Assembly (NCBI RefSeq): GCF_001194135.2
Contig: NC_069001.1
Location: 19,723,724-19,756,267, forward strand
Direction: 5' to 3'
DNA length: 32,544 bases
DNA from: Octopus bimaculoides
Taxonomy: Eukaryota
A model generated the notes under the pieces. It searched no databases. It was not told the origin of the DNA and was given only the letters and a program-made list of their open reading frames with translations. Below, piece after piece: positions 1 through 31,052 of the stretch. Made by a program: the position numbers and the translations under genes. The first letter of the stretch is position 1. Every line of letters begins with the position of its first letter.

Positions 1-1143
1 GCGTAGCTGCTAGAATAAGAATAGCCTGGGCAAGGTTCAGAGAGCTCTTACCTCTGCTGGCGACAAAGGGACTCTCACTCAGAATAAAAGGCAGACTGTA
101 TGACGCATGTGTACGAACAGCCATGCTCCATGGCAGTGAACCATGGGCTGTGACAGCTGAGGAAATGCGTAAGCTCGCAAGGAATGAAGCTAGTATGCTC
201 TGATGGACGAGTAATGTCAGTGTGCATACCCGCCAAAGTGTAAGTATCTTGAGAGAAAAGCTGAACATAAGAAGCATCAGCTGTGGTGTGCAAGAGAGAC
301 GATTGCGCTGGTATGGACATGTGGCGAGAATGGACGAGGATAGCTGCTTGAAAAAGTGCCAAACCCTAACAGTTGAGGGAACCCGTGGAAGAGGTAGGCC
401 CAAGAAGACCTGGGCTGAGGTGGTGAAGCAAGACCTTCGAACATTGGGCCTCACCAACGCGATGACTTCTGACCGAGACCTTTGGAAATATGCTGTGCGT
501 GAGAAGACTCGGCAAGCCAAGTGAGACCTNNNNNNNNNNNNNNNNNNNNNNNNNNNNNNNNNNNNNNNNNNNNNNNNNNNNNNNNNNNNNNNNNNNNNNN
601 NNNNNNNNNNNNNNNNNNNNNNNNNNNNNNNNNNNNNNNNNNNNNNNNNNNNNNNNNNNNNNNNNNNNNNNNNNNNNNNNNNNNNNNNNNNNNNNNNNNN
701 NNNNNNNNNNNNNNNNNNNNNNNNNNNNNNNNNNNNNNNNNNNNNNNNNNNNNNNNNNNNNNNNNNNNNNNNNNNNNNNNNNNNNNNNNNNNNNNNNNNN
801 TCGGGATGAAACCTGTGCCCAGCGTCGCCTTTCTGGCACTTGTGCCTGTGACATGTGTAAGGATTTTCGAGCGAGATCGTTGCCAGTGCCCCTGGACTGG
901 CTCTTGTGCGGGTGGCACATAAAATACACCATTTTGAGCGTGGCCGTTGCCATTACTGCCTGACTGGCCTTCGTGCAGGTGACACTCTCTGAGTGGTTGG
1001 CGTTAGGAAGGGCATCCAGCTGTAGAAACTCTGCCAAATCAGATTGGAGCCTGGTGTAGCCATCTGGTTTTACCAGTCCTCAGTCAAATAGTCCAACCCA
1101 TGCTAGCATGGAAATCGGACATTAAACGATGATGATGATGATG
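1..1143 (+). mobile_element. RTE-clade LINE, 3' portion (ORF C-terminus, 3' UTR, (GAT)n tail); cut by the window edge and an N gap
   Basis: Translation ...GRLYDACVRTAMLHGSE...RRLRWYGHVARMDEDS...RGRGRPKKTW ends at 524, typical of the RTE post-RT C-terminus. The 3' UTR (ggcgttaggaagggcatccagc...gctagcatggaa) and the (GAT)n tail at ~1128-1143 recur in other copies in this window. Confidence 0.9.
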
Positions 1144-1980: not shown

Positions 1981-2169
1981 TTTTAGCTGACTTTCTCCTA
2001 ACCTAACATTGGAATATCTATATTTTTGTTACACTGCTTAAATCTACATAATTTGATGTCCATAATGCTTATGCTTACAACGCTGCTAACACCGGCTCCT
2101 ACCACCAGTAGGGGCAACAATTTTAACATGCTTGAATGTTGTCAGGTCAGAAGAGAGAACAAATGAAGC

Positions 2170-5100
2170 ATGCCTAAAAAACAAACACCACAACCTCTCT
2201 CTTCTTTTCAGGCACTGAATAACATATCTCCTCCCCAAACTTCACCCCGCATTCCCTTCCCAGTTTTCAGAGTTAGCACTGTCAATGTTGGCACACTGAA
2301 AGGTAGGTCTAGTGAAATTGTAGAGATGCTTGAAAGGAAACAGGTTGATGTATGCTGCATACAAGAGGTAAGATGGAGAGGAGCTTCAGCTAGGGTCCTC
2401 ACAGGCAAAGCACATAGGTATAAAGTCTTCTGGCAAGATAACATGGATGGTGTAGGGGTGTAGGCATACTCCTTGCAGAGAAATGGGTGGATAAAGTCAG
2501 GGAGGTTGATAGGGTATGTGATAGAGCTTAAGTTCAGGCTAGTCCTGCAGAACAGCACAGCTACAATTATCTCCGCCTATGTCCCACATGCGGGGTTACC
2601 AAATGATCAGAAGGACCACTTTTATGATACCCTTCTACAGGCTACCTCAAAGATGAGTGGCAATGACCTCATCTTTGTGGCTGGAGATTTTAATGGGCAT
2701 GTTGGGCAGGAATCTGGTATCTTCACTGGGGTACACGGGTGCCATGGTATTGGCACCCGGAACAATGAGGGAACTAGGCTACTGGAGTTCTGTGATACAT
2801 GTAACCTTTTAATCTGCAACACTAACTTCAGGAAGCCAGACAAGCACCTGATAACCTATCAATCAGGGGACTCTGCTAGCCAGATTGATTTCATCCTCAC
2901 CAGACAGCAGGACGCAGTGTTGCTCTTAAATACAAAGACCCTTCTGGGTGAGGAATGTACCCCCCCAGCATAGGCTCGTCATTAGTGATTTTAGGCTTGA
3001 GGCCAGAAGGATACCAAGAAGTAGACCAATCCAAAAAAGAAGGATTTGGAAGGTAAAGAACCCTTCACATGGTCAGAGATTTAGGGACATCCTCATCAAG
3101 AAATTTGATGAGAGGGAGGAGGAGCTACAGACTTCTGACATAGAAGGTAGCTGGAAATTCCTACGGGACAGCTTGCTGAGTGCCACAACAGACCAAGTCT
3201 GTGGATGGTGCAAAGTCCCTTCCAGACCCAGAGTTACATGGTGGTGGAATAGTATGGTAGACAAAGCCATTAGAGCAAAGAAACAGGCCTGGAAAGCCTA
3301 GAAGGGTGGGGGTAGCAGGAAACTGTACCATGTAGCCAAAAGGGAGGCTGGGCGGCAGGTATACATAGCCAAGGGTGAAGTGGAAAAGTAGTAGTTTGCC
3401 AATGTCCAGCGACATGAGGACCAAAGAACTGAGGTATTTTGGATTGCAAGACAGTGTGTGAGAGAAAATTGTGATGTCACAGGAGAGAAATGTGTCCGCA
3501 TGGATGATGGTGTACTTGCTTTTAGTGATACTGAAAAGAAAGAGGCTTGGAGAATCCATTATGAAAACTCCTGAATGTGGAGAATGAATGGGAGGAGGAG
3601 AGCCTGCCAAATATTGACTCAGTAGAGAGACCAGCTATCCGAATAGACAGCTCCCTGGTAGATAAAGCAATGAAGGGTATGAAGCTAGGAAAAGCTCCCC
3701 ACCCATCAGGAATCACTACTGAGATGCTTAAAGCATCCGGTGGTGTGGGCTATGGCCTAGTCACCCGCATTGTAAACCAGGTAGTTCATGATGGAGTCAT
3801 ACCATAGTCAACTGCTACAAGGGTAAAGGTGATGCTCTAGATAGAAATAACTACAGGGCTATCAAACTGCTGGATCAAGTGATGAAGGTCATAGAGAGGG
3901 TCATAGCCCATCTCACTAGGGAGAGAGTCTGCTTAGATGAGGTGCAGTTTGGTTTTGTGCCAGGTAGAAGCACCACTGATGCCATATTCCTGGTTCGATA
4001 ACTGCAGGAGAAATACCTAGATAAAGATAAACCCCTATACTTAGCTTTTGTGGTCAGGGTCCTCCAATCCCTTATCTGGTGGGCGATGTGGAAACTGGAG
4101 ATTGACAAATGGTTAATAAGGGCTGTACAGGCCCTATCCAGAGAGGTCATTAGTAAGGTTAGGAAAGTATAGTGAAGAATTCCGGGTAGAAGTAGGGGTC
4201 CACCAAGGTTTAGCCCTCAGTCCCCTTTTATTCATTATAGTCCTCCATGCAGTAACAGAGGATTTCAAGATGGGTTGCCCTGCGAGCTCCTCTATGCTGA
4301 TGACCTAGCCCTAATAACAGAAACACTACTGGAACTAGAAAAGAAATTTCGGGTGTGGAAGCAAGGTTTAGAATCGAAAGGCCTTTGAGTCAATGTAGCA
4401 AAGACCAAAGTTCTAGTAAGTAGGAAGGCGAACTCATCACACACCCCATCAGGTAGGTGGCCCTGCTCGATGTGTAGAAAAGGAGTAGGTATAAACTCCA
4501 TAAGATGTACCAGTGTAAGCTATGGACGCATAAGAGTGCAGCAACATCAAAGGAAGATTAACTGAGAAGTTAGTGTTCGTGTACAGCAGATGCACAGGGG
4601 CAATAGACACCACAGATGCTCAGAAAACAGATTCCATCACACGCCAGGGGGAGAAACTAGAAGTAGTTGATAGCTTCCGCTACCTAGGTAACCAAGTCCG
4701 TAGTAGGCGTGAATGTTCAGAGAGTGTTACCACTAGAATAAGAATAGCTTGGGAAAAGTTCAGAAAGCTTCTACTACTGGTGACAAAGGGTCTCTTGCTC
4801 AGAGTGAAAGGTAGATTGTACGATGCATGTGTGCAAACTGCCATGCTTCATGGCAGTGAAACATGGGCCATGACTGCAGAGGACATGCGTAGGCTTGAAA
4901 GAAATGAAGCTAGCATGATCCACTGGATGTGTAATGTCAGTGTGCACACACGACAGAGTGTAAGCGCCCTGAGAGAAATGTTGGACATAAGTAGCATCGG
5001 ATGTGACATGCAAGAGAGATGTTTGTGCTGGTATGGTCATGTACTGCGGATGGATGGGGAGAGATGTGTGAAGAAGTGTCACTCCCAAACAGTTGAAGGA

Positions 5101-5707
5101 ATCTGGGGTAGAGGGAGACCCAGGAAGACATAGGATGAGGTGGTCAAGCATGACCTTCAAACATTGGGCCTCACAGAGGCAATGATGAAAGACCGAGACC
5201 TCTGGAGATATACTGTGATTGCGAAGACCTGACAAATAAAGTGAGTTCACGGTGTACCCTGCACCAGCTTCACATAACCAGCCCCAGCCCATTCAAGTAC
5301 CTAGGATCGTAGGGCGACCCACTGTGCTTGAGACCTTGAGTCAAGTACATCAGCATCAAAATAAAAATCAAATGGAAATTGTAGTTGTGATACTTGTGCT
5401 GGTGGCACGTAAAAAGCTCAATCCGAACGTGGCTGGTGCCAGCGCAGCCTTGACTGGCTTCTGTGCCGGTGGCACGTAAAAAGCACCAACCAGTTGTGGC
5501 CATTGTCAGCCACCTCTGGCCCCTGTGCCAATGGCACGTAAATAGTACCCACTACACTCACGGAGTAGTTCTCATTAGGAAGGGCATCCAGCAACACTGC
5601 CAGATCAGACTGGAGCCTGGTGCAGCCTCCTGGCTTCCCAGATCCCAGTCGAATCGTCCAACCCATGCTAGCATGGAAAACGGACGTTAAACAATGATGA
5701 TGATGAT
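2170..5707 (+). mobile_element. Near full-length decayed RTE-clade LINE (APE endonuclease + reverse transcriptase, many stops and frameshifts)
   Basis: APE motifs VSTVNVGTLKG, DVCCIQEVRW, FVAGDFNGHVG, SQIDFIL (2270-2910). RT region GKAPHPSGIT, YRGIKLLDQV, GVHQG and LYADDL-like codons (3690-4320). C-terminus GRGRPRKT ends at 5133. 3' UTR has repeated ggtggcacgtaaaaag modules and a (GAT)n tail at ~5694-5707. Confidence 0.92.
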
Positions 5708-7683: not shown

Positions 7684-7772
7684 GTTTTGTGCTAGAAGGG
7701 CTGCATCGCTCTGGTGTTACATCTGAAAGTGTTACAACTGAGAAAATGAATGAAGTCTTAAGTCATGTGATT
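7684..7772 (+). CDS. QTRT2: QTRT2 internal coding exon (first seen in window): (G)FVLEGLHRSGVTSESVTTEKMNEVLSHVI
   Basis: tacag acceptor and gtgagt donor; splices in frame to the next exon; resembles the GFLLDG segment preceding LPEDKPRL in recalled vertebrate QTRT2. Confidence 0.85.
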
Positions 7773-8144: not shown

Positions 8145-8460
8145 TTTTATCTATTATTTGTTTCAGTCGTTGGATTGTAACCATGCTGGGAAATTGCCTT
8201 GAAGACTTGAGTTGAACAAATTGATCCCAGTAGTTATTTTATTGTTATCCTGCTACCTTTTCTATCAGTCTCTTTTTGCTAAACTACTAAGTTACAGGGA
8301 CGTAAATAAACTAACATCAAGCTCTGGTGGGGGACAATCATAAAGACACACACACATACACATACTCACTCTCACACACACATATATAATGGATTTCTTT
8401 CCATTTCCATCTACCAAATCCATTCACAAGGTTTTGGTCAGCCCAGGACTATAATGGAAG
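8145..8460 (-). mobile_element. Decayed tRNA-derived SINE (same family as 10444-10850), antisense
   Basis: Reverse complement matches the body and tail of the + copy (gtttcagtc...ccatgctgg; gggggacaa; tttccatctaccaaatccattcacaaggttttggtcagccc). Confidence 0.75.
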
Positions 8461-9815: not shown

Positions 9816-9916
9816 AACAATTTACCTGAAGACAAACCTCGCCTAATGCAGTCATTGTGGACACCTGCAAAAGTGTTAGAAGCTGTTGAACAAGGAATTG
9901 ATATATTCGACAGTTC
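9816..9916 (+). CDS. QTRT2: QTRT2 coding exon: NNLPEDKPRLMQSLWTPAKVLEAVEQGIDIFDS(S)
   Basis: gacag acceptor; LPEDKPRL and GIDIFDS are TGT-family motifs; ends in phase 2 before ATATCCCTTT. Confidence 0.93.
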
Positions 9917-10443
9917 ATATCCCTTTTTTAACCTTATAAAGAATAATTCAGTTTCTGTAATCATTCTAATCTTTATTTGTGTATTATATATGATTCTATA
10001 AATAGCTTTTGTCCAGTACCCACTACCCTTTATTTAAAAAAAAAATTATTTAGAAAATATATTGTCTGTAAATTTAATGTGTTGGATTACAAACTGTATA
10101 ATCATAAGTTCATATCTCACTACAGTCTTTATGGTGTTATGCTGTTCTAGATATTTCTGGTTAGCTTTTTAATTTTCCCTGAATTAAATATATACCATAA
10201 TGTGTTAACAGTAATTTTCATAAAGATGGCATCTCTAAATTATTTAATTTCTTAACAATTCTATTTTTTCTACATCAACAATCATACTATCTTATACATA
10301 TACTTAGTGATTCTCTTATTACTTTCCTAAGTACAAAAAGTGAAGTTTGTTTTGCTGATGACTTTGTAATAAGGCAGAATTGTCTCCAGTATTTTCTAAA
10401 AAATGAAAACATTAGTTATTGACTTATGTTTTTTCCTTGCCAT

Positions 10444-10605
10444 AGGCACAAGGGTGGCTGTGCAGTAAGTAGTTTGCTTACCAACCACATGGTTCCAAGT
10501 TCAGTCCCACTGCATGGCACCTTAGGCAAGTGTCTTCTAATATAGCCTCAGGCTGACCAAAGCCTTGTGAGTGGATTTGGTAGACGGAAACTGAAAAAAG
10601 CCCGT

Positions 10606-10654
<49 letters not shown>

Positions 10655-10850
10655 GTGTCTGTGTTTGTCCCCCCACCATTGCTTGACAGCTGATGTTGGT
10701 GTGTTTATGTCCCTGTAACTTAGCCATTTGGCAAAAGAGTCTGATAGAATAAGTACTAGGCTTACAAAGAATAAATCCTGGGGTCAATTTGTTTGACTAA
10801 AGGTGCTGCTCCAGCACAGTCAAATGACTGGAACAAATAAACAAATAAAG
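10444..10850 (+). mobile_element. tRNA-derived SINE with internal (TA)n microsatellite
   Basis: Pol III A-box-like tggctgtgcagtaa and B-box-like ggttccaagttcagtccc; central (TA)n/(TG)n; A-rich tail. Antisense copies at ~8145, ~29100 and ~30734. Confidence 0.85.
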
Positions 10851-11259
10851 TCTATTTATTTCCAGTTAGCTTTTTTTAATGTTCCCTGCATGAAACACAC
10901 TAACTTAACTTCTGTTCCAATGTCCAAAGGCTTTATTGCTACTTCATGGTTGAGTGGTTATCAATAAGAATGACCCATCCAGTACAGCAGAATTGATATC
11001 CTAAAACCACTCAGTTATGCTTGGATGTATGTAGCCCTGTCCCTTCCTCCTCTCTCCCCTGTCTCTAACACATTGAGCACATCCCCCACTCCACTTGTCA
11101 CATTATCTACTCTTATTTTTTTTTCATTTCTGATGGTAATGTGTCATTTGATGAAGATCTGGCTGTTGTTTCTAGCAGGTTAAATAGTCACATAGAGGCT
11201 TCCTCAAAAATTTTTTATGCAGTAAAGAGCACAGAAAGTGTGTGTAGTGTTGCAATCGT

Positions 11260-11660
11260 TTAGCCCTAGATCAGTAGAGCTGTGATTAAAGACATTCTAA
11301 ACTTGACCAGTCCATCTTTTCTTTTGTAGTATTATAGAAGGTGGCGAGCTGGCAGAAACGTCAGCGTGCTGGGCAAAATGCTTAGCAGTATTTCATTTTT
11401 ACATTATGAGTTCAAATTCCGCCGAGGTCGACTTTATCTTTCATCCTTTCAGGGTCGATAAATTAAGTACCAGTTGCATACTGAGGTCGATCTAATTGAC
11501 TGACCCCCTCCCCCCTTGTGCCTAGATTAGAAAAGAATGTCGAGCATTATATTATCTAATGTGTCCTTTTATTGGTAAAGATGGTAGGGTGTGATTTTGA
11601 AGGAGATTTGGCTAAAATTTCTTACAGCTCAAGCAACTGCAAAGAGGTTCTTTTGTTGGC
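11260..11660 (+). mobile_element. Older dispersed repeat (gagggagatttggctgctatttctagc family) split by the SINE at 11336-11538
   Basis: Related fragments at ~8010-8110, ~9230-9400, ~11130-11200, ~13315-13350 (antisense), ~13960-14125 and ~21105-21155. Confidence 0.6.
11336..11538 (+). mobile_element. Second tRNA-derived SINE family
   Basis: A box ggcgagctggcaga, B box gagttcaaattcc. Central ggtcgacttt..ctttcatccttt..gggtcgataaattaagtaccag resembles conserved metazoan SINE central domains (superfamily not verified). Confidence 0.78.
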
Positions 11661-11848
11661 TTGTGTGTACAGAGTTGTTGCAAGAGGTACAAGAAGTGTG
11701 TGTATTGTGTTGGCATCTGCAAAAAAAGCTGTGTAGTATTCTATTATAACTATAGTTCTGTATTAATTTTTTTTTTTCAGTGAAATTTAAAATTATTTTT
11801 TTTCTTATTTAAAGCAAAAATTATAAATATTCCTTAATAGCTTCTCAG

Positions 11849-11974
11849 ATATCCATATCTAGCCACAGAAAGGGGAGCAGCCTTGGTTTTCAGTTTTCAG
11901 TCTACTAAATCTTTGAAAGAGTCTAACAACAGAGCTGGTTTGAAATCATTTGAAATAGCTCTTTCAGACCCAGA
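11849..11974 (+). CDS. QTRT2: QTRT2 coding exon: YPYLATERGAALVFSFQSTKSLKESNNRAGLKSFEIALSDP(D)
   Basis: ctcag acceptor and gtaagt donor; TERG.AL.FSF and SFEI match recalled QTRT2 motifs; phase 2-2, 126 nt. Confidence 0.92.
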
Positions 11975-11999: not shown

Positions 12000-12580
12000 C
12001 TAGCAGTATAACCCGACGTTGTCCAGGTGTGACTTATTATGCCATCTATGATAAGTCTTGGTAGGTGAAAATCAACTAAAAAAGAAAGCCTTACAACGAA
12101 AAAACCCTTATGATGTAAATATGTTCATAATTCAAAAGACGATGAAATTAATAGGGAAAGTCTGAAGGCAGTTTGTACGTAAATTTCATCCGTCTAATTG
12201 GCTATACAAATGTTTGTGCAAAACAACTTTTTGTGCTGCCCTGATTATACATAGCAGGGTAATCCCTTTACGCAGGAGCTAGGACGGCAATTTCTGATGA
12301 AGCAATTGCTGGCGATCTGTTGCTACACAGTTCTTCAGATTGGGCAGTAGATGTTGATACACCATTTTGCATTATGTTCAAAATAGCTTCTGGAATGTGG
12401 TGAATTGCTGCAGTCTGTTGCTGTCTTTTTAAACTGGTTGCTTTCTTTCCCCAGCAAGCTCTCTTCTTTGGAGGCATAATTTATGTACATCTTAAACAGA
12501 ACAACAAAAGTTATAACAAATAGCAGGGTCGGTAGTTTTCACATTTCGGTAATTTTTCAGATTAACACAAGCACGATTAC

Positions 12581-12618
<38 letters not shown>

Positions 12619-13515
12619 CAAAACCCTAACCTAAACCCTAACCCAAAAACCCTAACCTAAACCCTAACACCCTAGTGAAAATTGTGCGGGTGTTAATCTG
12701 AAAAGTTACCCACATTTCTAATGAAGTTAACGGATTTGCAATGTGTTGTCCTGTCTACATAAGCTCCGTAGTTTGTATATTTACAAAACATTGACGCACA
12801 TGTAGTAAGGTAAAATCTAGTTATATTGTAGTGAATGCTTGTATGTACGTGCGCATGTATGCGTTTGAGAGAGTGAGGAGGGGGAGAAAGGAAGAGAGAA
12901 CGGAAGACAGTTATAAAATAGCAATGTGTATGCATGTTTATATAAGAAACACACACAAACTAAATCTTATATCTATAATGTTGATGTGTTTATGTGTATG
13001 TTGTTGTCACAGATCACATATGTGTGGTTGTGTGTGTTTTTACGTTTCTATGTTATGAAAAATATGTTAGAGGTAGAGGGATAGAAGAAAGTTATTAAAT
13101 GGGAGAGAGGAAGAACGAAGTAAGAGTGAAAAGGTAGATAGAGGGGAAGAATAGTTTTAAAGCAAATTAATCTATGACTTTGTATGTATCACTTTCTCTC
13201 TCTCTCTCTTTTTCTCTCTGTGCCTCTTTTACTCTTACTCTCTATATTATATGTTGAGCGCGTGATCGATGTGTAAGAACGCCGGTCCAGGTAGAAGGGA
13301 AGAAATATAAAAGTTGCTAGAAACAACAGCCAAATCTCCCTTAAATCACACAAAGTAAACGGAATTTTAAAAAATCTAATTACTGCACTGGAAAGTTCAC
13401 ATCGAGAAAATTCCATTGATGTAAAAATTTTTACGAAAAAGTGGAAAATGTGGATTTCTATAAACTTTTATAAAGGCTTCACACAGATACACAACTTCAG
13501 CTTTATATATTAAGA
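12000..13515 (-). mobile_element. Non-autonomous (internally deleted) Helitron
   Basis: Minus strand: 5' A|TCTTAATATATAAAG at 13515; 3' hairpin acctggacaacgtcgggt followed by CTAG|T at 12003-11999; A|T target, no TSD. Short ORF MPPKKR... (12477-12268) may be the remnant RepHel start. Confidence 0.8.
12548..12710. mobile_element. 163-bp MITE with (CCCTAA)n core and 8-bp TSD, nested in the Helitron; Merlin-like
   Basis: TIRs GGTAATTTTTCAGATTAACAC...GTGTTAATCTGAAAAGTTACC. CACATTTC at 12540-12547 and 12711-12718. About 95 bp of degenerate CCCTAA repeats inside. Confidence 0.88.
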
Positions 13516-14585: not shown

Positions 14586-17500
14586 TCATCATCATCATCA
14601 TTGTTTAATGTCCGCTTTCCATGCTAGCATGGGATGGACGATGTGACTGAGCACTGGTGAACCAGGTGGCTACACCAGGCTCCAATCTGATTTGGCAGAG
14701 TTTCTACAGCTGGATGCCTTTCCTAATGCCAACCACTCTGAGAGTGTAGTGGGTGCTTTTACGTGCCACCGGCACGAAGGCCAGTCAGGCAGTACTGGCA
14801 ATGGCCACGCTCGAAATGGTGTATTTTACGTGCCACCTGCACAGGAGCCAGTCCAATGTCTTTTCACGTACCACCGGCACAAGTGCCAGGAAGGTGACGT
14901 TGGTAACGATCACGCTCAAATGGTGCTATTTATGTGCCACCGGCATGGAAGCCAGACAGCTGCTCTGGCAACGATCACGCTCGAACGGTGCTCTTAGTGC
15001 TCCACTGGTACAGGTGCCATCATGATTTCGCTTTCNNNNNNNNNNNNNNNNNNNNNNNNNNNNNNNNNNNNNNNNNNNNNNNNNNNNNNNNNNNNNNNNN
15101 NNNNNNNNNNNNNNNNNNNNNNNNNNNNNNNNNNNNNNNNNNNNNNNNNNNNNNNNNNNNNNNNNNNNNNNNNNNNNNNNNNNNNNNNNNNNNCAGAGGC
15201 CTTGGATTTTGGTCTCACTTGGCTTGCCGGGTCTTCTCACACACAGCATATTTCCAAAGGTCTTGGTCACAAGTCATTGCCTCAGTGAGGCCTAATGTTC
15301 GGAGGTCGTGCTTCACCACCTCATCCCAGGTCTTCCTGGGCCTGCCTCTTCCACAGGTTCCCTCAACTGCTAGGGTGTGGCACTTTTTCACACAGCTATC
15401 CTCATCCATTCTTGCCACATGTCCATACCAGCGCAATCGTCTCTCTTGCACACCACAACTGATGTTTCTTAGGTTCAACTTTTCTCTCAAGATACTTACA
15501 CTCTGTCGGGTATGCACACTGACGTTACTCATCCATTGGAGCATACTGGCTTTATTCCTTGCAAGCTTATGCATGTCCTCAGCAGTCACGGCCCATGTTT
15601 CACTGCCATGTAGCATGGCTGTTCGTACACATGCGTCATACAGTCTGCCTTTTATTCTGAGTGAGAGGCCCTTTGTCACCAGCAGAGGTAAGAGCTCTCT
15701 GAACTTTGTCCAGGCTCTTCTTATTCTAGCAGCTACACTTTCAGCGCACCCTTCCACCACTCCTAACTTGGTCACCCAGATAGCGGAAGCTATCAACTAC
15801 GTCTAGTTTTTCTCCCTGGAATGTGACAGAAGTTGTTTTCTGCACATTTTCAGTGTTTATTGCTCCTGAACATCTGCCACATACAAAAACTAACTTTCTA
15901 GTTCCTAGTTAACCTTCCTTTGATATTGCTGCACCTCTTATGTGTCCATAGCTTGCACTGGGTACATCTTATAGAGTTTCTACCCACACCTTTTCTACAG
16001 ATCGAGCAGGGCCATCTACCTGAAGGGGTTTGTGTTTTGTCTACCTTCCTACTTATTAGGACTTTGGTTTTAGCTAGGTTGACTCTAAGGCCCTTTGATT
16101 CTAGTCCTTGCTTCCACACCTGAAACTTCTCCTCTAGTTCTTATAGTGAATCAGCAATTAGTGCAAGGTCATCAGCATAGAGGAGCTCCCAAGGGCATCC
16201 TGTCTTGAATTTCTCTGTTATCGCCTGGAGAACTATGATAAATAGGAGGGGGCTGAGGACTGAACCTTGGTGGACCCCTACCTCTACCTGGAATTCTTCA
16301 CTGTACTCGTTGCCAACCCTCACCTTACTGACAGCGTCCTTGTATATGGCCTGCACAGCTCTCACTAACCACTCATCTATCCCTAGTTTCCTCATTGACC
16401 ACCAGATAAGGGAGCGGGGACCCTGTTGAAGGCTTTCTCCATGTCAACAAAAGCCAGGTACAGAGGTTTATCCTTGGCTAGGTATTTCTCCTGCACCTGT
16501 CTTACCAGAAATATAGCATCAGTGGTGCTTTTCCTGGAACGAACCCAAACTGCATCTCATCTAAACTGATTGTCTCCCTAATTAGTTGGGCTATGACCAT
16601 CTCTGTGACCTTTATTACCTGGTCCAACAACTTGATACCTCTGTAATTGTTTGTGTCTAGGGCGTCACCTTTACCTTTGTAGCAGTTGACTATGGTGCTG
16701 CTACACCAGTCATTGGGTATGACTTCTTTGTGTATCACCTGATTAACTATACGGGTCACTAGGTTATAGCCAACACTGCCAGATATTTTGAGCATCTCTG
16801 CAGTGATTCCTGATGGGCCGGGGGCTTTTCCTGCCTTCATACTCTTGATCGCTTTATCTACTAAGGTACTGTCAATTAGGATAGCTGGTCCCTGTGTTGG
16901 GTCAACATGCGGCAAACTCTATCCTCCCATTCATACTCTTTATTAAGTAGCCTTTCATAGTGGCGTCTCAAGACCTTTCTCCTTGCAGCCTCGTTTAGTG
17001 CAAGTGAACCATCATCCAAGTGGACACGATTCCCTCTCACACACTGTCTTGCAACACAAAATACTTCAAGTCTTTGGTCCTCATGGCACAGAACATTGGC
17101 AAATTTTTTCTTATCTGCTTCCCCTCTGGCTAAGTAAACCTGTCTCCTAGCTTCCCTTCTGGCAGTCTGATACAATTCCCTGCTACCACCGTTCTTCCAG
17201 TCCTTCCAAGCCTGTTTCTTTTGTCTAATACCCCTGTCAAGCACATTGTTCCACCACCACGTTACTTTGGGTCGAGAGGGGACTTTACACCAGCCACAGA
17301 TCTGGTCAGTGGTTCTCAGCAGGTTGTCCCATAGAAACCTCCAGTTGCCTTCCACGTTGTATGATGCTATATCCCCTTCTATTTCGTCAAATGTTTTGAG
17401 TAGTATGTCTCTAAATCTCTGTCCATTTTCAGGATCTTTAAGCTTCCAAACCCTTCTCCTCCAAGCCGGTCTACTTCTGGGCATCCATATTGCCTTATCC

Positions 17501-17629
17501 CGAAGTCGCTAACTACTAATCTGTGTTGAGGGGTACATTCTTTGCCAGGGACGGTTTTGGCATTTATAAGCCGCCCACTTTCCCTATTTCTGGCGAGGAT
17601 ATAGTCGATTTGGCTAGTGTGTCTGCCGA
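14586..17629 (-). mobile_element. 5'-truncated decayed RTE-clade LINE, antisense in a QTRT2 intron
   Basis: Minus-strand translations GKAPGPSGIT, NYRGIKLLDQV, GVHQGSVLSPLLF, LLYADDL, RGRGRPRKTW; (ATC)n tail at 14586-14601; truncated at the end of the APE domain. Confidence 0.93.
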
Positions 17630-17964
17630 TAAAAAAAAGGCCTCAGTGGCATAGCCTTTAAATTCATATTTTAACTAGTTAGTGCTAGAAAGTAGCTCGA
17701 TTATCCACATAGGCCATTGGCCTGCATGTCACATACTTTCAATCAGTATAAGAAATATGTCAGTCTAATTACAAATAGTCACAGATTTTGTGTACTGACT
17801 CCACAGCCTTAGCTAAAAGTTAGGAAAATAGCAAAGATAAGGATAATACTTCAAATATATTGAAATGTTAGCATTGTTCTTGTTGGTCATAAGTTAAAAT
17901 CTCATACTTTGTTCTCCTCCTGAATCAGACATATAACTCCTCTTGTTCCAGTTTACATGACTGA

Positions 17965-18138
<174 letters not shown>

Positions 18139-18773: not shown

Positions 18774-18894
18774 CCACAACTTCAGTCATTATTTCGGTTA
18801 CTTTGAGGCAATACGTCAGGCTCTAAAAGACAATGCATTTCTTCAGCTCAAAGCACTCATCCAAGAACAGGCATCAATGTTAGACAAAGAATAA
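18774..18894 (+). CDS. QTRT2: QTRT2 terminal coding exon: HNFSHYFGYFEAIRQALKDNAFLQLKALIQEQASMLDKE*
   Basis: ttgcag acceptor; HN motif supplies the fourth Zn ligand; stop TAA at 18892-18894. Confidence 0.95.
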
Positions 18895-19905: not shown

Positions 19906-20910
19906 CTAGCAGTATAGCCTGGCTTTGCCCGGGGATTAAGTTAGGATTATTAAGCTAATGAAGTTCTTTATTTCAAACCAAACTAAGTAACATCGACGTC
20001 AGATTTGGGCAGAATCAGTGTCACAACTGGAGCGCATGGGTCGGGAGTTTGATCGGCAGAGGTGATCAGGCTACACATGCCAGCCCTTTGAAAACACCAC
20101 CCCCAACATCTAACCCATCTTTGCCCATGGGTTGGGAACCCTTCCAGCAAGGAAAATAGAATGCTCAAAAGGGCTCCCGATTCTCTGTGTCAGAAGCGGA
20201 TCACAACTAAGTCTTAAGTATATGTATATATGTATATATATATANNNNNNNNNNNNNNNNNNNNNNNNNNNNNNNNNNNNNNNNNNNNNNNNNNNNNNNN
20301 NNNNNNNNNNNNNNNNNNNNNNNNNNNNNNNNNNNNNNNNNNNNNNNNNNNNNNNNNNNNNNNNNNNNNNNNNNNNNNNNNNNNNNNNNNNNNNNNNNNN
20401 NNNNNNNNNNNNNNNNNNNNNNNNNNNNNNNNNNNNNNNNNNNNNNNNNNNNNNNNNNNNNNNNNNNNNNNNNNNNNNNNNNNNNNNNNNNNNNNNNNNN
20501 NNNNNNNNNNNNNNNNNNNNNNNGACAACATTCTTCGTCCTTCCCTCGGGTGCACAAATAGAAAGACCATGGGGACAGCCAGCGTACAGTTGTGCGTGTG
20601 AGAATACTTGCTCTGTCAGATTCAAACCAACCGCTTGCACTGATTGTCCCTGTGCCTTGTTGATTGTCATGGGAAAGCAGAGTTTGATGGGAAATTGCAT
20701 CTGTTTAAACTTGTAGGTCGTATCGGAGTGGGTAAGGGACATGGGAGTTATAAGTATGTCTTAGCCAGTGGCCAGTTCATTCAAGATTGTTGCCTACAGA
20801 ACTCGGGAGCACAATTTTTTGATAATCATCCGCGTACCATTGCACATCATTGGAGCATCTAAATTCCTTAGCAGCATGATTGGCACACCAACTTTCAGAT
20901 GCAGTTCTCT
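19906..20910 (-). mobile_element. Helitron 3' portion with a PIF1-type helicase C-terminal relic
   Basis: Minus strand ELHLKVGVPIMLLRNLDAPMMCNGTR (~20910-20830) and FKQMQFPIKLCFPMTINKAQGQS...VFSHAQLY...TKNVV (~20715-20524); 3' hairpin cccgggcaaagccagg followed by CTAG|T at 19909-19905. The 5' end was not located. Confidence 0.88.
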
Positions 20911-21613
20911 TCAAATAAAACTTTTACGGATACAACTGCTTACAATAATAGGGATTCATATATAATTTCTTTCTATGTTCATAATTAAATCAATGTTTTC
21001 ATGATTACACACAGGTCCAATAGAATAGCTCTCACAAACACACTACGTACAAATTCGTTCTTCAGGAGTTTTCAAACTACATAATAGGCAGAATTGTCGG
21101 ATTAAGACAGTAGGGTATTTTGAGGGAGATTTGGCTGCTATTTCTACCAGGACTAGCTACCATACAGAGGTTTGATCTTAATTTTCATTCACATATTTGC
21201 ATTTCAAAAATTAAACATAATCTTTTCCATAAATCAACTATTGTAAAAATTTTCTACGATGACATTTTCTATGTATNNNNNNNNNNNNNNNNNNNNNNNN
21301 NNNNNNNNNNNNNNNNNNNNNNNNNNNNNNNNNNNNNNNNNNNNNNNNNNNNNNNNNNNNNNNNNNNNNNNNNNNNNNNNNNNCACACACACACACACAC
21401 ACATCCATTTCATATATCTTCTTTCAATTTCTGCTCTCGGCAAATAACATTTTTACGGATACAACTGCTAACAAAAATAGGGATTAATGTATAATTTCTT
21501 TCAATGTTTTAATGATTAGAGAGAGGTCCAATAGAATAGCTCTCAGAAACAGACAAGTACAAATTCGTTCTTCACAACTCCTGAAGCTGTTTTCTGACAA
21601 GGAGGTGGGAGTC

Positions 21614-23725: not shown

Positions 23726-24763
23726 TGAGGCAGAGAGAGGGGGGTGCCAGAGTTAAGGTGGTCAGAACACGTGGGAGAAAAATATTCTTTTGGGATTTGG
23801 GTAGCATAATTTAATGAATCAGCAAATGTCGATAATAGTAAAATAGAATTGAAAAATCTGAGAGTTTTCGGTTAGCCAATCTAAGAGAAATAAGTGACTG
23901 TGAATAAATAAAACGTGGTGGTTAAGGATATGCGTGAACTAATGTTATCTTAAGGTAACAACGAGGAAGAAGAAGCTATTGAAACTATATTTACATATCT
24001 GCAAGGTAATGAAATAGATAGAATAATGAAAAGAACTAATAGGAAGTTTATGTTCTGCGCAGAAATAGAAGAATAGATGAACGAGGTTGAAAAGACAAAA
24101 CTTCTTATCTGAGCATCTTCTGAGATTCGTATCGTTCGGCAGGGGTATTAAAAATCGAGTAGGAGAATCCGGGTGCGTGCGCTAGTTTATATAGGGTGGA
24201 GGTGGTGGTGGAGGAGGAAGTCTTGGCGAAGCGAGTGGTAATCAAAAGAGAGAGAGACAGACAGACAGAATGAGGTCAAGAGAGAAAGACAGAGTGAGCT
24301 TCCATGTTGTTGCCTTAAGATAACTTTAGTTCACAGATTCATTTATTTCTCTAATTTTGTCATAGATTGGCTGACCGAAAACTCTCAGATTTTTCATTTC
24401 TATTGTATTATCGGCATTTGCTGTTTCGTTAAATTATGCTACTCAGATCCCAAAAGAATATTTTTCTCCCACGTGTTCTGACCACCTTAACNNNNNNNNN
24501 NNNNNNNNNNNNNNNNNNNNNNNNNNNNNNNNNNNNNNNNNNNTCTCTCTCTCTCTCTCTCTCTGCCTCACTCTGTCTGCCTGCCTGTCTGTCTGTCTGT
24601 CTCTCGGCCTCACTCTGACTCTCTCTCTCTTTCGATTACCACTCACTTCGCCAAGACTTCCTCCTCCACCACCAACCCCACCTTACATAAACTAGCGCAT
24701 GCACTTGGATTCCCCTACTCGATTTTTAATACCGCCACCAAAAGTATACGTATGCAGAAGATG
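23690..24763. repeat. Complex inverted-repeat (foldback) cluster
   Basis: 23752-23969 is the reverse complement of 24299-24491; 24114-24298 is the reverse complement of 24544-24763; GA/TC microsatellites link the modules. Confidence 0.85.
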
Positions 24764-24788: not shown

Positions 24789-25224
24789 GGACAGAAAGAC
24801 CGATTTTATGGCGTGGGTATATTTCTTGCGGAGAAATGGGTTGACAAGGTAATCGAGGTAAGAGTATGTGACAGAATACTTAGGATTAGATTAGAGCTTC
24901 ATCATGGGTTAGCAACCATTATCTCGGCCTATACCTCTCAGCCGATGGACAGACAAACCGATTTTATGACACCATCTTGCAAGCTACCTCGTTGACGAAT
25001 GACAGGGACCTTCCCTTTGTGGCTGGTGACTTCAATGGACATGTTGGACAACATACAGAGGGCTTCCATGGCGTACATGGAGGCTACAGTTTTGGTTTCT
25101 GCAATGAGGAGGGAACCAGGCTGCTGGAGTTCTGCGATGCAAATGATCTTATGGTTTGGAACACTAACTTCAGGAAACCTGCCAGTCATCTAGTCACCTA
25201 CCGTTCTGACAGACACACTAGCCA
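24789..25224 (+). mobile_element. RTE APE-endonuclease fragment
   Basis: YGVGIFLAEKWVDKV, FVAGDFNGHVG, GTRLLEFCDANDL, NTNFRKP; homologous to 2450-2880. Confidence 0.88.
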
Positions 25225-25227
25225 TTC

Positions 25228-28200
25228 CTAGAAAACATGAAGTTGCAAAATGTTGCAAATCAGCCACAAATAGTTTGCAAATTTTGAAATGAAAAATTCT
25301 TCTTTTCCCATATACCATTAATTCTTTTGTGACTTTTCATTTTTCTCATTTATTTGGTTGAAAAGTAAACTTGGTAATATACATTTGCTGGTAGATGTGA
25401 AGATTATATTTATAAAACATTTCACTGAAATCTCACGAATACTTAGAAAACATGAAGTTGCAAATTGTTGCAAACCAGCATCAAATTGTTTGCAAATTTT
25501 GAAATGAAATATTCTTGTTTTCCATATACAATCAGTTCTTTTGAGACTCTACGTTTTTTACCCGTGCACTTATTTCATTGAGAAGTAATGGCTTGATATA
25601 CATTTACTGGAAGATGTGAAGATAATATTTACCAAACATTTCACTAAAATCCTGGAAAATCCTGGAATTCCTGGAAAATATGAAGTTCCAAAACGTCGCA
25701 AACCAAATTCAAATTGTTTGCAAATTTTAAAATGAACAATTCTTGTCTTCCCATACACAATTAGTTTCTTTGTGACTTTTCATATTTCTGACATGCACTT
25801 GTTTGGTTGAGAAGTAATGTGTTACAGGCATTCTTACAAAAACATGAAATTGCAAACTGTTGCAAATCAGCTTCAAATTGTTTCCAAATTTTAAAATGAA
25901 ATATTGTTGTTTTCCATATACAATGAGTTGGTTTGTAACTACGTTTTTTACACACGCACTTATTTCATTGAGAAGTAATGGCTTGGTAAGCATTGTAGAT
26001 ATGAAGATTATATTTACCAAACATTTCACTAAAACATCGAATATTCCTGGAAAACATGAAGTTTCCAATTGATGCAAATCACCCACAAATTGTTTGCAAA
26101 TTTGGAAATGCAAAATTCTTGTTTTCCCATATACCATTAGTTCTTCGTGACTTTTCATTTTTCTCACACGCACCTATTTGGTTGAAAAGTAAATTTGTTA
26201 ATATATATTTGCTGGTAGATGTGAAGATTGTATTAACCAAACATTTCACTGAAATGAATTGTAAATTGTTGCAAATCAGCAATGAAGATGCAAAATGTTG
26301 CAAATGAGCATCAAATTGTTTGCAAATATTGAAATGAAAAATTCTTCTTCTCACATATACGATTAGTTCATTTGTGACATTTCATTTGTTAAACACTCGC
26401 TTATTTGATTCAAACGTGAAGGTTTAATATACATTTGCTGATGGAAGTGACGTTTCAATTTCATACATTTCACTGAAATCTGAAGAATTGTCATAAAAAC
26501 ATGAAGTTGCAAAATGTTGCAAATCAGCATCAAATTATTTTCAAATTTTGAAATGAAAAATTATTCTTTTACCAAATCATTTTTTTATCAAATCATTTGT
26601 TTTTTACACAAGCATTTATTTGATTGAGATGTAATGGCTTGATATACATTTACTGGTAGATGTGAAGACTGTATTTACCAAACATTTCACGAAATCTCCA
26701 GTGTACCTGGAAAACATGTTTTTGCAAAATGTTGCAAATCAACCTCAAATTGTTTGCAAATTTTTGAATGAAAAATTCTTGTTTTTCGATATACCATTAG
26801 TTCATTTCTGATTTTTCATTTTTCTGACACGCACTTATTTGTTTGGGAAGTGATTGTCGATGTTTAGATTATACTTAACAAACTTTTCACTGAAATCTCA
26901 AGCATTGATGGAAAAAAATGAAGTTGCAAAATGTTGCAAATCAGCTTCAAGTTGTTTTAAAATTTTAAAATGAAATATACTTGTTTTCCATAGGAAGGAT
27001 TTCTTTTGTGACTCTACGCTTTTTACACACGCACTTATTTGTTTGAGATGAAATGTTATAATATACATTGGCTGGTGAATGTGAAGATTATTTTTACCTA
27101 ACATTTCACTGAAATCTCAATTCTTCCAAAAACATGAAGATGCAAAATGTTGCAAATCAGCATCAAATTGTTGATTTTCCATACAATTAGTTCATTTGTG
27201 ACTTTTTCATTTTTACACAAGGATTTAATTGATATTTCCACGTGGATGGGAAGATTATATTAACCAAACAATTCACTGAAATCTGAAGAATTGTTACAAA
27301 AACATGAAGTTGAAAATGTTACAAATCAGCATTAATTTATATTCAAATTTTGAAATGAAAAATTCTTCATTTCACTTGTATTTCATTTGTGACTCTATGC
27401 TTTTTACACGCGCAATTATTTCATTAAGAAGTTATGGCTTGATATACATTTACTAGTAGATGTGAAGATTATATTTACATTGCAAATCAGCCGCAAATTG
27501 TTTGCAAATTTTGAATTGAAAATTTCTTGATTTCCCATATAGCAATAGTTCATTTGTTAATAATAGTTCATTTGTTAATAATAGTTCATTTCACTGAATT
27601 ATCAAGCATTCATGGAGAACAAGAAGTTGCAAAATATTACCATTCAGCATCAAATTGTTTCTAGAGTTTGAAATGAAATATTCTTCTCTTCCTAATTGTG
27701 AAATTTCGTTTTTTACACAAGCACGTATTTGATTGAGAAGTAATGGCTTGATATATATTTACTGGTAGATGTGAAGATAATATTTACCAAACATTTCACC
27801 AAAATCTCAGGCATTAATTGAAAACATGAATTTCCAAAACGTTGCAATTGAATCTCAAATTCTTTCCAAAATTCGAAATGAAAAATTCTTGCTTTTCCAC
27901 ATACCATTAGTACCTTTGTGACTTTTTTCATTTTGCTAATAAGCATTTATTTGTTTGAGAATAAATGGGTGAACATACATTTCCATAAATGTGTAAATAG
28001 TAACCTAGAAAACAAGAAATTTTCCTTTCCAAATTCTGCTATAATTTCATGCTTATTTGCAATATTTTATGACTGTTTTTTGAGAAAGATTGTGATTTCA
28101 GTGAAATGTTTGGTGAATTTGATCTTGTCTGATTACTTTTCAATCTGAAAGGTGTTTGTCAGAAAAATGAATACTCACAAATGTTTAAACTGGAAATTAG

Positions 28201-29099: not shown

Positions 29100-29385
29100 T
29101 TTAGTCCTTTACTTGTTTCAGTAATTTGACTGTGGCTATGCTGGAGCACCGCCTCTAGTCGAACAAATCGACCCCGGGACTTCTTTGTAAGCCTAGTACT
29201 TATTCTATCGGTCTCTTGCCGAACTGCTAATTTACGGGGATGTAAACACACCAGCATCGATTGTCAATGGGGACAAACACAGACGCACAAACATACATAC
29301 ACACACACACACATACATAGATATATACATATATACGGCAGGCTTCTTTCAGTTTCCATCTTCTAAATCTACTCACAAGGATTTG
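29100..29385 (-). mobile_element. tRNA-derived SINE, antisense, head missing
   Basis: Reverse complement of the 10444-10850 family. Confidence 0.85.
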
Positions 29386-29642
29386 GAAATTTTGTGAAAA
29401 TGGTTGTGACATCGGTGAACTCTTTGATAAATATACTGTTTTCATCAACCATCTAGCCTATATAAACCCAGTAGACTTCAAAATGAATAGTGGTNNNNNN
29501 NNNNNNNNNNNNNNNNNNNNNNNNNNNNNNNNNNNNNNNNNNNNNNNNNNNNNNNNNNNNNNNNNNNNNNNNNNNNNNNNNNNNNNNNNNNNNNATACAA
29601 TATCCTGTGAGTATTTAAAATTCCCTTCAAAATAAGTTAAGA

Positions 29643-30733: not shown

Positions 30734-30962
30734 TTCTTTTACTTGTTTCAGTCATTTAACTGTGGCCATGCTGGAGCACCACCTCAAAGGGTATTTTAGT
30801 CGAAAAAATCGACTCCAGAACTTATTCTTTCTAAGCCTAGTACTTAGTCCATCGATCACTTATGCTGAACCGCTAGATTACGGATATGTAAACACCAACA
30901 TCGGTTGTCAAGCGATGGTGGGGGAAAACACAAAGACACACACACGCACACATACACACACA

Positions 30963-31052
<90 letters not shown>

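What the first reader, a model, noticed from the sequence alone, without database searches (positions are those of the whole stretch)
9917..11848. AT-AG U12-type (minor spliceosome) intron in QTRT2
Seen: no GT donor at the end of the 9816 exon preserves the frame to the CAG at 11848. The intron starts ATATCCCTTT, carries TTCCTTAAT 10 nt before the AG, and joining TC|A gives FDSSYPYLATERG. Known: U12 introns have RTATCCTTT 5' sites and TTCCTTRAY branch sites close to the 3' end, are usually GT-AG or AT-AC, and mixed AT-AG ends are rare. Inference: this is a minor intron with hybrid termini, perhaps an intermediate between AT-AC and GT-AG subtypes, that could make tRNA-queuosine enzyme assembly depend on minor-spliceosome activity. 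ATATCC also starts the downstream exon, so aligners and annotators can misplace the junction by up to 6 nt.
Basis: partly seen in the sequence, partly recalled or inferred. Interest (0 to 1): 0.75.

Follow-up and report, generated by a model that had tools for sequence, protein, structure and literature searches.

The report
AT-AG minor-spliceosome intron in QTRT2
One intron of the QTRT2 gene (the accessory subunit of the enzyme that puts queuine into tRNA) carries all the sequence signals of the rare minor (U12) spliceosome and has the uncommon but well-catalogued AT...AG ends, so it is a sound new example of a known kind of intron, not a new phenomenon.

Summary
Exon 9816-9916 is followed by ATATCCCTTT. 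TTCCTTAAT lies at 11830-11838, and its branch adenosines are 11-12 nt from CAG|A at 11848/11849. Only the 9916|11849 join gives FDSSYPYLATERG.

That sequence aligns without a gap to human and mouse QTRT2 structures, to six other eukaryotic homologues and to 80 prokaryotic TGT loci. The canonical GT-AG alternatives add 14 or 16 residues inside this conserved motif and cost 12 bits against Pfam TGT. They also use weak donors and an acceptor with a poor pyrimidine tract.

Each U12 motif alone occurs at chance frequency in the window. Both falling on the homology-defined borders has a probability of about 1e-7 to 1e-6.

I read it as a U12-type, phase-2, 1932-nt intron with AT-AG ends. No RNA data or independent reads were reachable, so use of the junction and the A at 9917 remain unconfirmed.

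The class is known. AT-AG introns are about 0.9% of conserved animal minor introns (658 cases), and the "subtype-switch intermediate" idea was published in 2006. QTRT2 is not in the human or mouse minor-intron tables. One unidentified marine eukaryote shares the downstream intron position and phase, and has a matching candidate acceptor upstream, but lacks this intron.

Verdict: a new member of a known kind, of modest interest.

The parts
7684..7772 (+). QTRT2 exon upstream of the finding (…FVLEGLHRSGVTSESVTTEKMNEVLSHVI). It follows the acceptor tttatttacag| and ends at the donor ATT|GTGAGT, phase 0.
   Evidence: tblastn with P0004. It is collinear in a family HMM, positions 90-121, directly before the next exon at 122. 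Adding it extends the ungapped alignment to human QTRT2 residue 221 and raises the score from 159.4 to 166.4 bits. Sequence read.
9816..9916 (+). QTRT2 exon A (NNLPEDKPRLMQSLWTPAKVLEAVEQGIDIFDS + TC). It ends in phase 2.
9917..11848 (+). The intron in question: 1932 nt, phase 2, ends AT...AG, with U12-type signals.
9917..9925 (+). U12-type 5' splice site ATATCCCTT. It matches RTATCCTTT at 8 of 9 positions, with C instead of T at +7, and is followed by TTTT.
   Evidence: The variant is attested: human MATN1 has ATATCCCTT, and GTATCCC occurs 30 times in the MIDB table. TTC|ATATCC is identical to the TMEM231 and SCN8A minor 5' splice sites.
11830..11838 (+). U12-type branch-point sequence TTCCTTAAT. 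The candidate branch adenosines are 11836 and 11837.
   Evidence: Second-best branch-site score in the 65 kb scanned, and at the 38th percentile of 77 real human branch sites. TTCCTTAATA is identical to the human PPP2R2A and ZC3H6 branch sites.
11846..11848 (+). 3' splice site CAG|A, 11-12 nt downstream of the branch adenosines. The C before the AG is typical of animal AT-AG minor introns.
   Evidence: Literature.
11839..11840 (+). Proximal AG, only 3-4 nt from the branch adenosines. Joined to the U12 5' splice site it shifts the frame and gives a TAG at 11860-62. Joined to the GT at 9951 or 9957 it adds 14 or 16 residues.
   Evidence: reading.
9951..9958 (+). Two weak canonical GT donors (TCA|GTTTCT and TCT|GTAATC) that could serve as in-frame U2-type alternatives.
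11849..11974 (+). QTRT2 exon B (A + YPYLATERGAALVFSFQSTKSLKESNNRAGLKSFEIALSDP + GA). It starts with a second ATATCC. Its donor is AGA|GTAAGT, phase 2.
10522..10849 (-). Copy of an interspersed SINE-like repeat with a (TA)n tract, lying inside the intron.
   Evidence: blastn of the intron against the window: 71-79% identity to 8206-8460, 29100-29386 and 30738-31162.
18003..18128 (+). QTRT2 exon C (zinc-site region [18 protein letters not shown]). Acceptor ttttttttttccag|, donor GCT|GTATGT, phase 2.
18774..18894 (+). QTRT2 last coding exon (HNFSHYFGYFEAIRQALKDNAFLQLKALIQEQASMLDKE, stop TAA at 18892-94). AATAAA follows at about 18909.

Best explanation
Bases 9917-11848 are a U12-type (minor-spliceosome) intron of the QTRT2 gene with non-canonical AT-AG ends.

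Inferred mechanism, from the established model of minor splicing:
1. The U11/U12 di-snRNP binds the 5' splice site ATATCCCTT through U11. U6atac takes over this site later. U12 binds the branch site TTCCTTAAT at the same time.
2. One of the two adenosines at 11836/11837 attacks the bond between 9916 and 9917.
3. The 3' splice site is the first usable site at the preferred distance, CAG|A at 11848/11849.
4. The AG at 11839-40 is too close to the branch point. The AC at 11865-66 is too far.
5. The ligated mRNA reads ...GAC AGT TC|A TAT CCA TAT..., which encodes FDSSYPYLATERG, the conserved strand-loop motif of the TGT fold.

Shown here: the motifs, their spacing, the frame, the homology across the junction, and the lack of a canonical alternative that keeps the motif intact.

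Inferred: that this junction is the one used, that it depends on the minor spliceosome, and that the cut sites are in register 0 of the seven that give the same mRNA.

Because A(+1) with a terminal G is reported to be a less efficient combination, this intron may be a slow step in QTRT2 expression. That is an inference only.
For: - The joined peptide aligns ungapped to human and mouse QTRT2 chains 7nq4_B, 7b2i_A and 6fv5_A (E down to 5e-48). The same 13-residue spacing FD..........G is kept in P0001-P0006 and in 80 prokaryotic TGT loci.
- Exhaustive enumeration shows that only 9916|11849, or same-mRNA shifts of it, gives this product.
- Pfam TGT scores 143.4 bits for the AT-AG product and 131.1 bits for the best GT-AG alternative.
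- The 5' splice site matches at 8 of 9 positions, and the +7C variant is attested in human MATN1.
- The branch site matches at 9 of 9 positions and is the only TCCTTRAY on the + strand of the window.
- The branch-to-3' splice site distance is 11-12 nt, against a published optimum of 11-13 nt.
- The pyrimidine tract is weaker than at the three neighbouring U2-type acceptors: longest pyrimidine run 6 against 8-12.
- The C before the terminal AG fits animal AT-AG minor introns.
- The intron is phase 2, which fits the minor-intron bias against phase 0.
- The joint chance placement is about 1e-7 to 1e-6.
- The neighbouring introns are ordinary GT-AG, and the exons give an intact reading frame ending where human QTRT2 ends.
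Against: - There is no transcript, lariat or read-level evidence. None could be reached.
- The 5' splice site is at the weak end. It scores 7.1 bits, in the lowest 4% of 77 real human minor 5' splice sites in my own matrix. Eight or more other 12-mers in the window score higher by chance.
- C at +7 would mismatch U6atac if the organism's snRNA resembles the human one. This rests on my own knowledge of the snRNA sequence.
- AT-AG combinations are described as disfavoured and poorly spliced.
- In-frame GT-AG alternatives exist.
- The window is a draft assembly with six N gaps, so a G-to-A error at 9917 cannot be excluded.
- QTRT2 is not a minor-intron gene in human or mouse, so orthology gives no support.
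Confidence: 0.82

Rival explanations
1. The true base at 9917 is G, through an assembly or consensus error or a heterozygous site. The intron would then be an ordinary GT-AG U12-type intron.
For: The window is a draft with six runs of N. GT-AG minor introns are about 80 times commoner than AT-AG in animals, 74.2% against 0.89%. Even a per-base error rate of 1e-3 therefore gives a posterior of several percent (my estimate: 0.74e-3/(0.74e-3+0.009), about 0.08; with 1e-4, about 0.01). No independent assembly of the locus is on record.
Against: Nothing in the local sequence suggests low quality. It is unique sequence, and the nearest N run (530-800) is more than 9 kb away. ATATCC-type 5' splice sites are common (342 ATATCCT in the MIDB table). 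The C before the AG fits the AT-AG class.
Confidence: 0.05
2. The intron is removed mainly by the major spliceosome from the GT at 9951 or 9957 to the AG at 11840. This would give a QTRT2 with 14 or 16 extra residues, and the U12-like motifs would be coincidental.
For: Both pairs are in frame and free of stops. A T-rich stretch lies about 30-40 nt upstream of the AG. The extended protein still matches Pfam TGT at 131 bits.
Against: The insertion splits a motif that is ungapped from bacteria to human and costs 12.3 bits. The donors TCA|GTTTCT and TCT|GTAATC match the MAG|GTRAGT consensus poorly, whereas the neighbouring donors are GTAAGT, GTGAGT and GTATGT. The acceptor has the lowest pyrimidine fraction of the five compared, 0.53. 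Coincidental placement of both U12 motifs has a probability of about 1e-6 or less.
Confidence: 0.05
3. It is a canonical AT-AC U12 intron that uses the AC at 11865-66 as its 3' end (join 9916|11867).
For: The join is in frame and would give canonical AT-AC ends.
Against: It deletes the six conserved residues YPYLAT. The AC lies 29-30 nt from the branch adenosines, far outside the 11-13 nt optimum.
Confidence: 0.02
4. The locus is a decaying or non-functional gene copy, so the apparent splice signals have no current function.
For: Only the last five exons were found in the window. The further N-terminal exons were not detected. The surrounding DNA is rich in transposon fragments.
Against: All five exons are open, collinear and bounded by good splice sites. 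The reading frame ends at the same residue as human QTRT2, and the zinc-site residues C-x-C-x2-C...H are kept.
Confidence: 0.03

Closest known systems
Natural AT-AG U12-type introns, for example human and mouse NUP210, USP21, RAPGEFL1 and INPP5B (Sheth et al. 2006, PMC1557818), and the 658 conserved animal cases in Larue & Roy 2023 (PMC10639083)
   Same: ATATCC-type 5' splice site, U12 branch site close to the 3' end, terminal AG preceded by C, and a non-zero phase.
   Different: The host gene differs: QTRT2 is not in the human or mouse minor-intron tables. The 5' splice site has the rare C at +7. No transcript support is available here.
Human MATN1 minor intron (MIDB table, Olthof et al. 2019, PMC6717393)
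   Same: The 5' splice site is identical over +1..+9 (ATATCCCTT), and the branch site is a strong TCCTTAAC type.
   Different: It is an unrelated gene. Its 3' terminal dinucleotide was not checked here.
Canonical AT-AC U12-type introns, such as those of SCN8A and TMEM231
   Same: The -3..+6 sequence TTC|ATATCC is identical, and the branch site and spacing follow the same rules.
   Different: The last intron base is G instead of C. According to the literature this combination is spliced less efficiently.
U2-type introns with non-canonical ends (U2-type AT-AC)
   Same: The 5' dinucleotide is non-GT.
   Different: Those introns have U2-like 5' splice sites (ATAAGT-like) and pyrimidine tracts, and they lack the TCCTTAAC box. 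This intron has the U12 box and the short branch-to-3' splice site distance. This comparison rests on Sheth 2006 and my own knowledge.

Membership tests
U12-type (minor) intron | 5' splice site matching RTATCCTTT from +1 | tested here: met
   ATATCCCTT matches at 8 of 9 positions. C at +7 is rare but attested: 31 of 1291 MIDB entries, including human MATN1 with the identical 9-mer. My 77-intron matrix gives 7.1 bits, inside the range of real sites (5.3-16.6) but in the lowest 4%.
U12-type (minor) intron | Branch-point sequence TTCCTTRAY | tested here: met
   TTCCTTAAT at 11830-38 matches at 9 of 9 positions. It scores 10.8 bits, the second-best site in the window on both strands.
U12-type (minor) intron | Short branch-to-3' splice site distance (optimum 11-13 nt) | tested here: met
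   11 or 12 nt from A11837 or A11836 to the last intron base, 11848. The optimum is taken from Turunen et al. 2013.
U12-type (minor) intron | No strong polypyrimidine tract | tested here: met
   The longest pyrimidine run in -43..-4 is 6, against 8, 9 and 12 at the three U2-type acceptors of the same gene that were compared. The pyrimidine fraction is 0.68 against 0.74-0.79. The difference is modest.
U12-type (minor) intron | The junction is actually used in mRNA | not testable with these tools
   No transcript data. No near-identical protein or contig is in the collections. The only support is homology across the junction.
U12-type (minor) intron | Splicing depends on the U11, U12, U4atac and U6atac snRNPs | not testable with these tools
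   This needs an experiment. The source organism was not identified here, so even the presence of a minor spliceosome is assumed. The literature reports conserved minor introns in Octopus and enrichment in molluscs.
AT-AG subtype of U12 introns | Terminal dinucleotides AT and AG, with the cut sites in the consensus register | tested here: met
   A9917-T9918 and A11847-G11848. Of the seven registers that give the same mRNA, only this one puts RTATCC at +1. It depends on the assembly base at 9917 being correct.
QTRT2 (queuine tRNA-ribosyltransferase accessory subunit 2) | Closer to QTRT2 than to the catalytic subunit QTRT1 or to bacterial TGT, with the TGT fold and the zinc site | tested here: met
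   Human and mouse QTRT2 chains give E = 5e-48 to 9e-47, bacterial TGT 2e-22, and QTRT1 1e-11. Pfam TGT scores 143 bits. CTCYSC...H is present. Only residues equivalent to human 221-415 are in the window.

The most novel reading that the evidence does not exclude
This may be a lineage-specific gain of a minor intron, not an ancient one.

For: QTRT2 is not a minor-intron gene in human or mouse. An unidentified marine eukaryote (L001) has the same downstream intron position and phase, and a matching candidate acceptor at the upstream exon border, yet reads straight through this site. The intron is also bracketed by a 6-nt direct repeat, ATATCC, which could be the footprint of an insertion or duplication that created the 5' splice site from coding sequence (TC-A TAT CC = Ser-Tyr-Pro).

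Against: loss of minor introns is common and gain is regarded as extremely rare. Given a conserved S-Y-P, the repeat has a chance of about 1 in 8. The intron ends carry no terminal inverted repeats.
Probability: 0.08. Interest if true: 0.55.

Novelty: new member of a known kind. Interest (0 to 1): 0.25.

Why it matters
For annotation: a gene finder or aligner that allows only GT-AG, GC-AG and AT-AC will fail here in one of three ways. It may break the QTRT2 model, insert 14-16 false residues into the conserved TGT motif, or place the junction up to 6 nt off because of the ATATCC repeat.

For biology: QTRT2 expression in this organism would depend on the low-abundance minor spliceosome, through an intron whose end combination is reported to splice inefficiently. 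That is an ordinary property of several hundred genes in animals.

For evolution: it is one more data point on non-canonical minor-intron ends and on turnover of minor introns. The intron is present here, is not listed as a minor intron in mammals, and is absent from one other eukaryote that shares the downstream intron position. It does not open a new question.

Tried and rejected
- **Orthologous intron in other species.** One scan of metagenome contigs with an alignment of the junction peptide returned 80 loci, all continuous prokaryotic TGT genes. This was useful only to show that the motif is never gapped.
- **Protein searches.** Two searches found six eukaryote-like fragments at 38-54% identity. 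None was a close relative and none was a transcript of this species, so there is no RNA-level evidence. Contigs for P0001, P0002 and P0003 read through the site uninterrupted.
- **Independent assemblies to check A9917.** Exact-product look-ups of two ORFs from the window found nothing.
- **Literature link between QTRT2/QTRTD1 and minor introns.** Nothing in full text, and nothing in the uncut MIDB supplementary tables, where the control gene NUP210 was found. Supplements of two other papers were not held or not informative. Dietrich et al. 2005 is not held.
- **Transposon-insertion origin.** There are no terminal inverted repeats at the intron ends, only A/T-rich low-complexity matches. I rejected this as unsupported.
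- **Functional RNA inside the intron.** No Rfam family and no tRNA anywhere in the window.
- **Further N-terminal exons.** A human QTRT2 sequence recalled from memory was used only as a tblastn probe. With a small family HMM it found five collinear exons and nothing upstream of 7684.
- **A corrected statement.** My first working conclusion, that no exon lies upstream of 9816, was wrong. Searches corrected it.
- **A failed call.** One Pfam call failed on a stop codon and was repeated.
Full report
**What is in the sequence**

On the + strand, an acceptor (ttatgtcttttgacag|) opens an exon at 9816. In frame it reads NNLPEDKPRLMQSLWTPAKVLEAVEQGIDIFDS and leaves two bases, TC, at 9915-16. The next bases are ATATCCCTTTTTT.

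About 1.9 kb downstream lie TTCCTTAAT (11830-38), an AG (11839-40), CTTCTCAG (11841-48) and then ATATCCATATCTAGCCACAGAAAGGGGA.... Joining 9916 to 11849 gives TC|A = Ser, followed by YPYLATERGAALVFSF.

Every statement of fact in the finding checks out. This includes the second ATATCC at the start of the downstream exon and the two in-frame canonical alternatives (GT at 9951 or 9957 joined to the AG at 11840), which add exactly 14 and 16 residues.

**The gene**

The joined peptide hits the solved structures of human and mouse QTRT2 best. QTRT1 and bacterial TGT score far lower. I found five collinear exons in the window:

| Exon | Coordinates |
|---|---|
| Z | 7684-7772 |
| A | 9816-9916 |
| B | 11849-11974 |
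| C | 18003-18128 |
| D | 18774-18894, ending in TAA |

- Their 186-residue product aligns to human QTRT2 residues 221-415 and ends at the same residue.
- The other three introns are ordinary GT-AG, with donors GTGAGT, GTAAGT and GTATGT and clear pyrimidine tracts.
- The downstream exon ends at 11974, not 11975, and this makes the phases fit.
- No exon upstream of 7684 was detectable. The 5' part of the window is a degenerate LINE-like element.

**Which junction is right**

I listed every donor/acceptor pair in the neighbourhood that keeps the frame, has no stop, and uses any terminal dinucleotides reported for either spliceosome.

- Only 9916|11849 gives FDSSYPYLATERG. So do shifts of it by 1-6 nt, which yield the same mRNA because of the ATATCC repeat.
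- That 13-residue spacing from FD to G is kept without a gap in human and mouse QTRT2, in six other eukaryotic homologues and in 80 prokaryotic TGT loci, as FDCVLPTRxARxG.
- Pfam's TGT model gives 143.4 bits to this product and 131.1 bits to the best GT-AG alternative.
- The AT-AC option (9916|11867) deletes six conserved residues.
- The GT donors are poor (TCA|GTTTCT, TCT|GTAATC), and the acceptor at 11840 has the weakest pyrimidine content of the five compared.

**Is it a U12-type intron**

- **5' splice site.** It matches RTATCCTTT at 8 of 9 positions. C at +7 is rare in the mouse and human MIDB table (ATATCCC 1 against ATATCCT 342; GTATCCC 30 against GTATCCT 853). It is attested, though: the human MATN1 minor intron has the identical ATATCCCTT. 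The -3..+6 stretch TTC|ATATCC is identical to the TMEM231 and SCN8A sites.
- **Branch site.** It matches TTCCTTRAY at 9 of 9 positions. TTCCTTAATA is identical to the human PPP2R2A and ZC3H6 branch sites.
- **My own matrix.** In a matrix built from 77 human minor introns, the branch site is the second-best 12-mer in the window on either strand. The 5' splice site scores 7.1 bits. That is within the range of real sites but in the lowest 4%, and several chance 12-mers in transposon sequence score higher. The 5' splice site alone would therefore not be convincing.
- **Geometry.** The branch adenosines are 11-12 nt from the CAG|A, and the published optimum is 11-13 nt. The nearer AG is 3-4 nt away, and using it would shift the frame into a TAG at 11860. 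The AC is 29-30 nt away.
- **Subtype features.** The C before the AG is the feature reported for animal AT-AG minor introns. The intron is phase 2, which fits the minor-intron bias against phase 0.

**Chance**

RTATCCYTT and TTCCTTRAY each occur twice in the window, close to the 1.5 and 2.0 expected from shuffles. Their significance lies in their positions. The probability that one falls on a register-compatible position at the end of the homology-defined exon, and the other 8-20 nt before the start of the next, is about 6e-8. With the looser cores it is about 1e-6.

**What could not be shown**

No transcript, no lariat, no reads and no second assembly of this locus could be reached. Three things therefore remain inferred:
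- that the junction is used;
- that it depends on the minor spliceosome;
- that the base at 9917 is A.

AT-AG introns are about 80 times rarer than GT-AG minor introns, and the assembly is a draft with N gaps. I therefore put a few percent on 9917 really being G. That would leave a perfectly ordinary GT-AG minor intron.

**Comparison with what is known**

- Sheth et al. 2006 listed 11 human, 8 mouse and 1 Arabidopsis AT-AG U12 introns. AT-AG was their commonest non-canonical class, and they already proposed it as a viable intermediate in AT-AC to GT-AG switching.
- Larue & Roy 2023 count 658 AT-AG introns, 0.89% of conserved animal minor introns. They report that molluscs are relatively rich in minor introns and that 83% of human minor introns are conserved in octopus.
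- Turunen et al. 2013 describe AT-AG as disfavoured and poorly spliced.
- From my own memory, because the paper is not held: Dietrich, Fuller & Padgett 2005 showed experimentally that a 5' A can splice to any 3' terminal base, with C preferred.

The class, its rarity and the 'intermediate' idea are thus all in the literature. What appears unreported is the host gene. QTRT2/QTRTD1 is absent from the uncut MIDB tables of human and mouse minor introns, where the control gene NUP210 is present. No paper in the library links the gene to minor splicing.

**Distribution**

One unidentified eukaryote from a marine metagenome (L001, 54% identity) has a single exon spanning exons A and B.
- Its likely acceptor (cag|AAACATCTCCCG) aligns to the first codon of exon A, although the open frame continues upstream.
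- Its donor is at the same position and phase as the end of exon B (AAAAG|gtaaaa against CCAGA|gtaagt).
- It has no intron at this site.

An intron-poor eukaryote (L082) also lacks the intron. Loss in those lineages is the more likely explanation, because loss of minor introns is common and gain is considered extremely rare. Gain is not excluded.

The 6-nt ATATCC direct repeat that brackets the intron is mostly explained by the conserved Ser-Tyr-Pro codons (about 1 in 8). The intron ends have no inverted repeats.

**Verdict**

This is a real, well-formed U12-type intron with AT-AG ends in QTRT2. It is supported by homology, motif content and spacing, and not yet by RNA. It is a new member of a known kind and mainly matters for correct annotation. 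Interest is modest.

Noticed in passing
L001:113-342 (ENA metagenome scaffold, sample ERZ23498428): An unidentified marine eukaryote has a QTRT2 exon spanning window exons A and B. The donor position and phase are the same, and a candidate acceptor lies at the same codon, but there is no intron at the AT-AG site. This is a case of either intron loss or gain.
   Followed up: partly
window 7684-7772: A further QTRT2 exon lies upstream of the finding (FVLEGLHRSGVTSESVTTEKMNEVLSHVI). It was detected only with distant homologues. No exon upstream of it was found, so the 5' part of the gene is probably outside the window.
   Followed up: yes
window 11849-11857: Exon B begins with a second U12-like 5' splice site core, ATATCCATA, produced by the codons for Ser-Tyr-Pro. 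It makes the junction ambiguous by up to 6 nt and could act as a decoy for U11.
   Followed up: partly
window 9917-9929: After ATATCC the intron reads CTTTTTT. If the organism's U11 5' end resembles the human one (AAAAAGGG, from memory), CCCTTTTT could pair with it continuously in a register shifted by one base. That might offset the C at +7.
   Followed up: no
window 8206-8460, 10522-10849 (opposite orientation), 29100-29386, 30738-31162: Four copies of a SINE-like interspersed repeat of about 300 nt, 71-79% identical to one another. Each carries a microsatellite: (TA)n at 10612-10648 and (AC)61 at 30928-31050. One copy sits inside the AT-AG intron.
   Followed up: partly
window 2167-5130 (+), 24890-25228 (+), 32300-32544 (+): Degenerate, frame-shifted non-LTR retrotransposon sequence. 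Pfam matches the endonuclease (Exo_endo_phos_2) and the reverse transcriptase (RVT_1). The fragment at 32300-32544 is endonuclease-like only by eye and has no Pfam match. By eye, similar reading frames also lie on the - strand at about 15200-17900, inside the 6-kb intron between exons B and C, and at the window start; these were not scanned against Pfam.
   Followed up: partly
window 25839-27172: A tandem array of a 215-nt unit with about 6 copies at 70% match. Related units appear to extend to about 28900, judging from repeated ORF-like translations.
   Followed up: no
window 12579-12668: A short tandem array (period 26, 3.5 copies) built from CCCTAA-like units. It resembles an interstitial telomere-like repeat and lies in the intron after exon B.
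   Followed up: no
window 530-800, 15036-15193, 20245-20523, 21277-21383, 24492-24543, 29495-29594: Six runs of N (assembly gaps). The window comes from a draft assembly, which bears on how far the single base at 9917 can be trusted.
   Followed up: yes
window 9910-9912 (codon GAC, Asp of FDSSY): This QTRT2, like homologues P0001-P0006, keeps Asp in the G-x-D-x-F-D motif, where human and mouse QTRT2 have Glu (FES). In catalytic TGTs this is the nucleophile position (from my own knowledge). The rest of the active site is outside the window.
   Followed up: no
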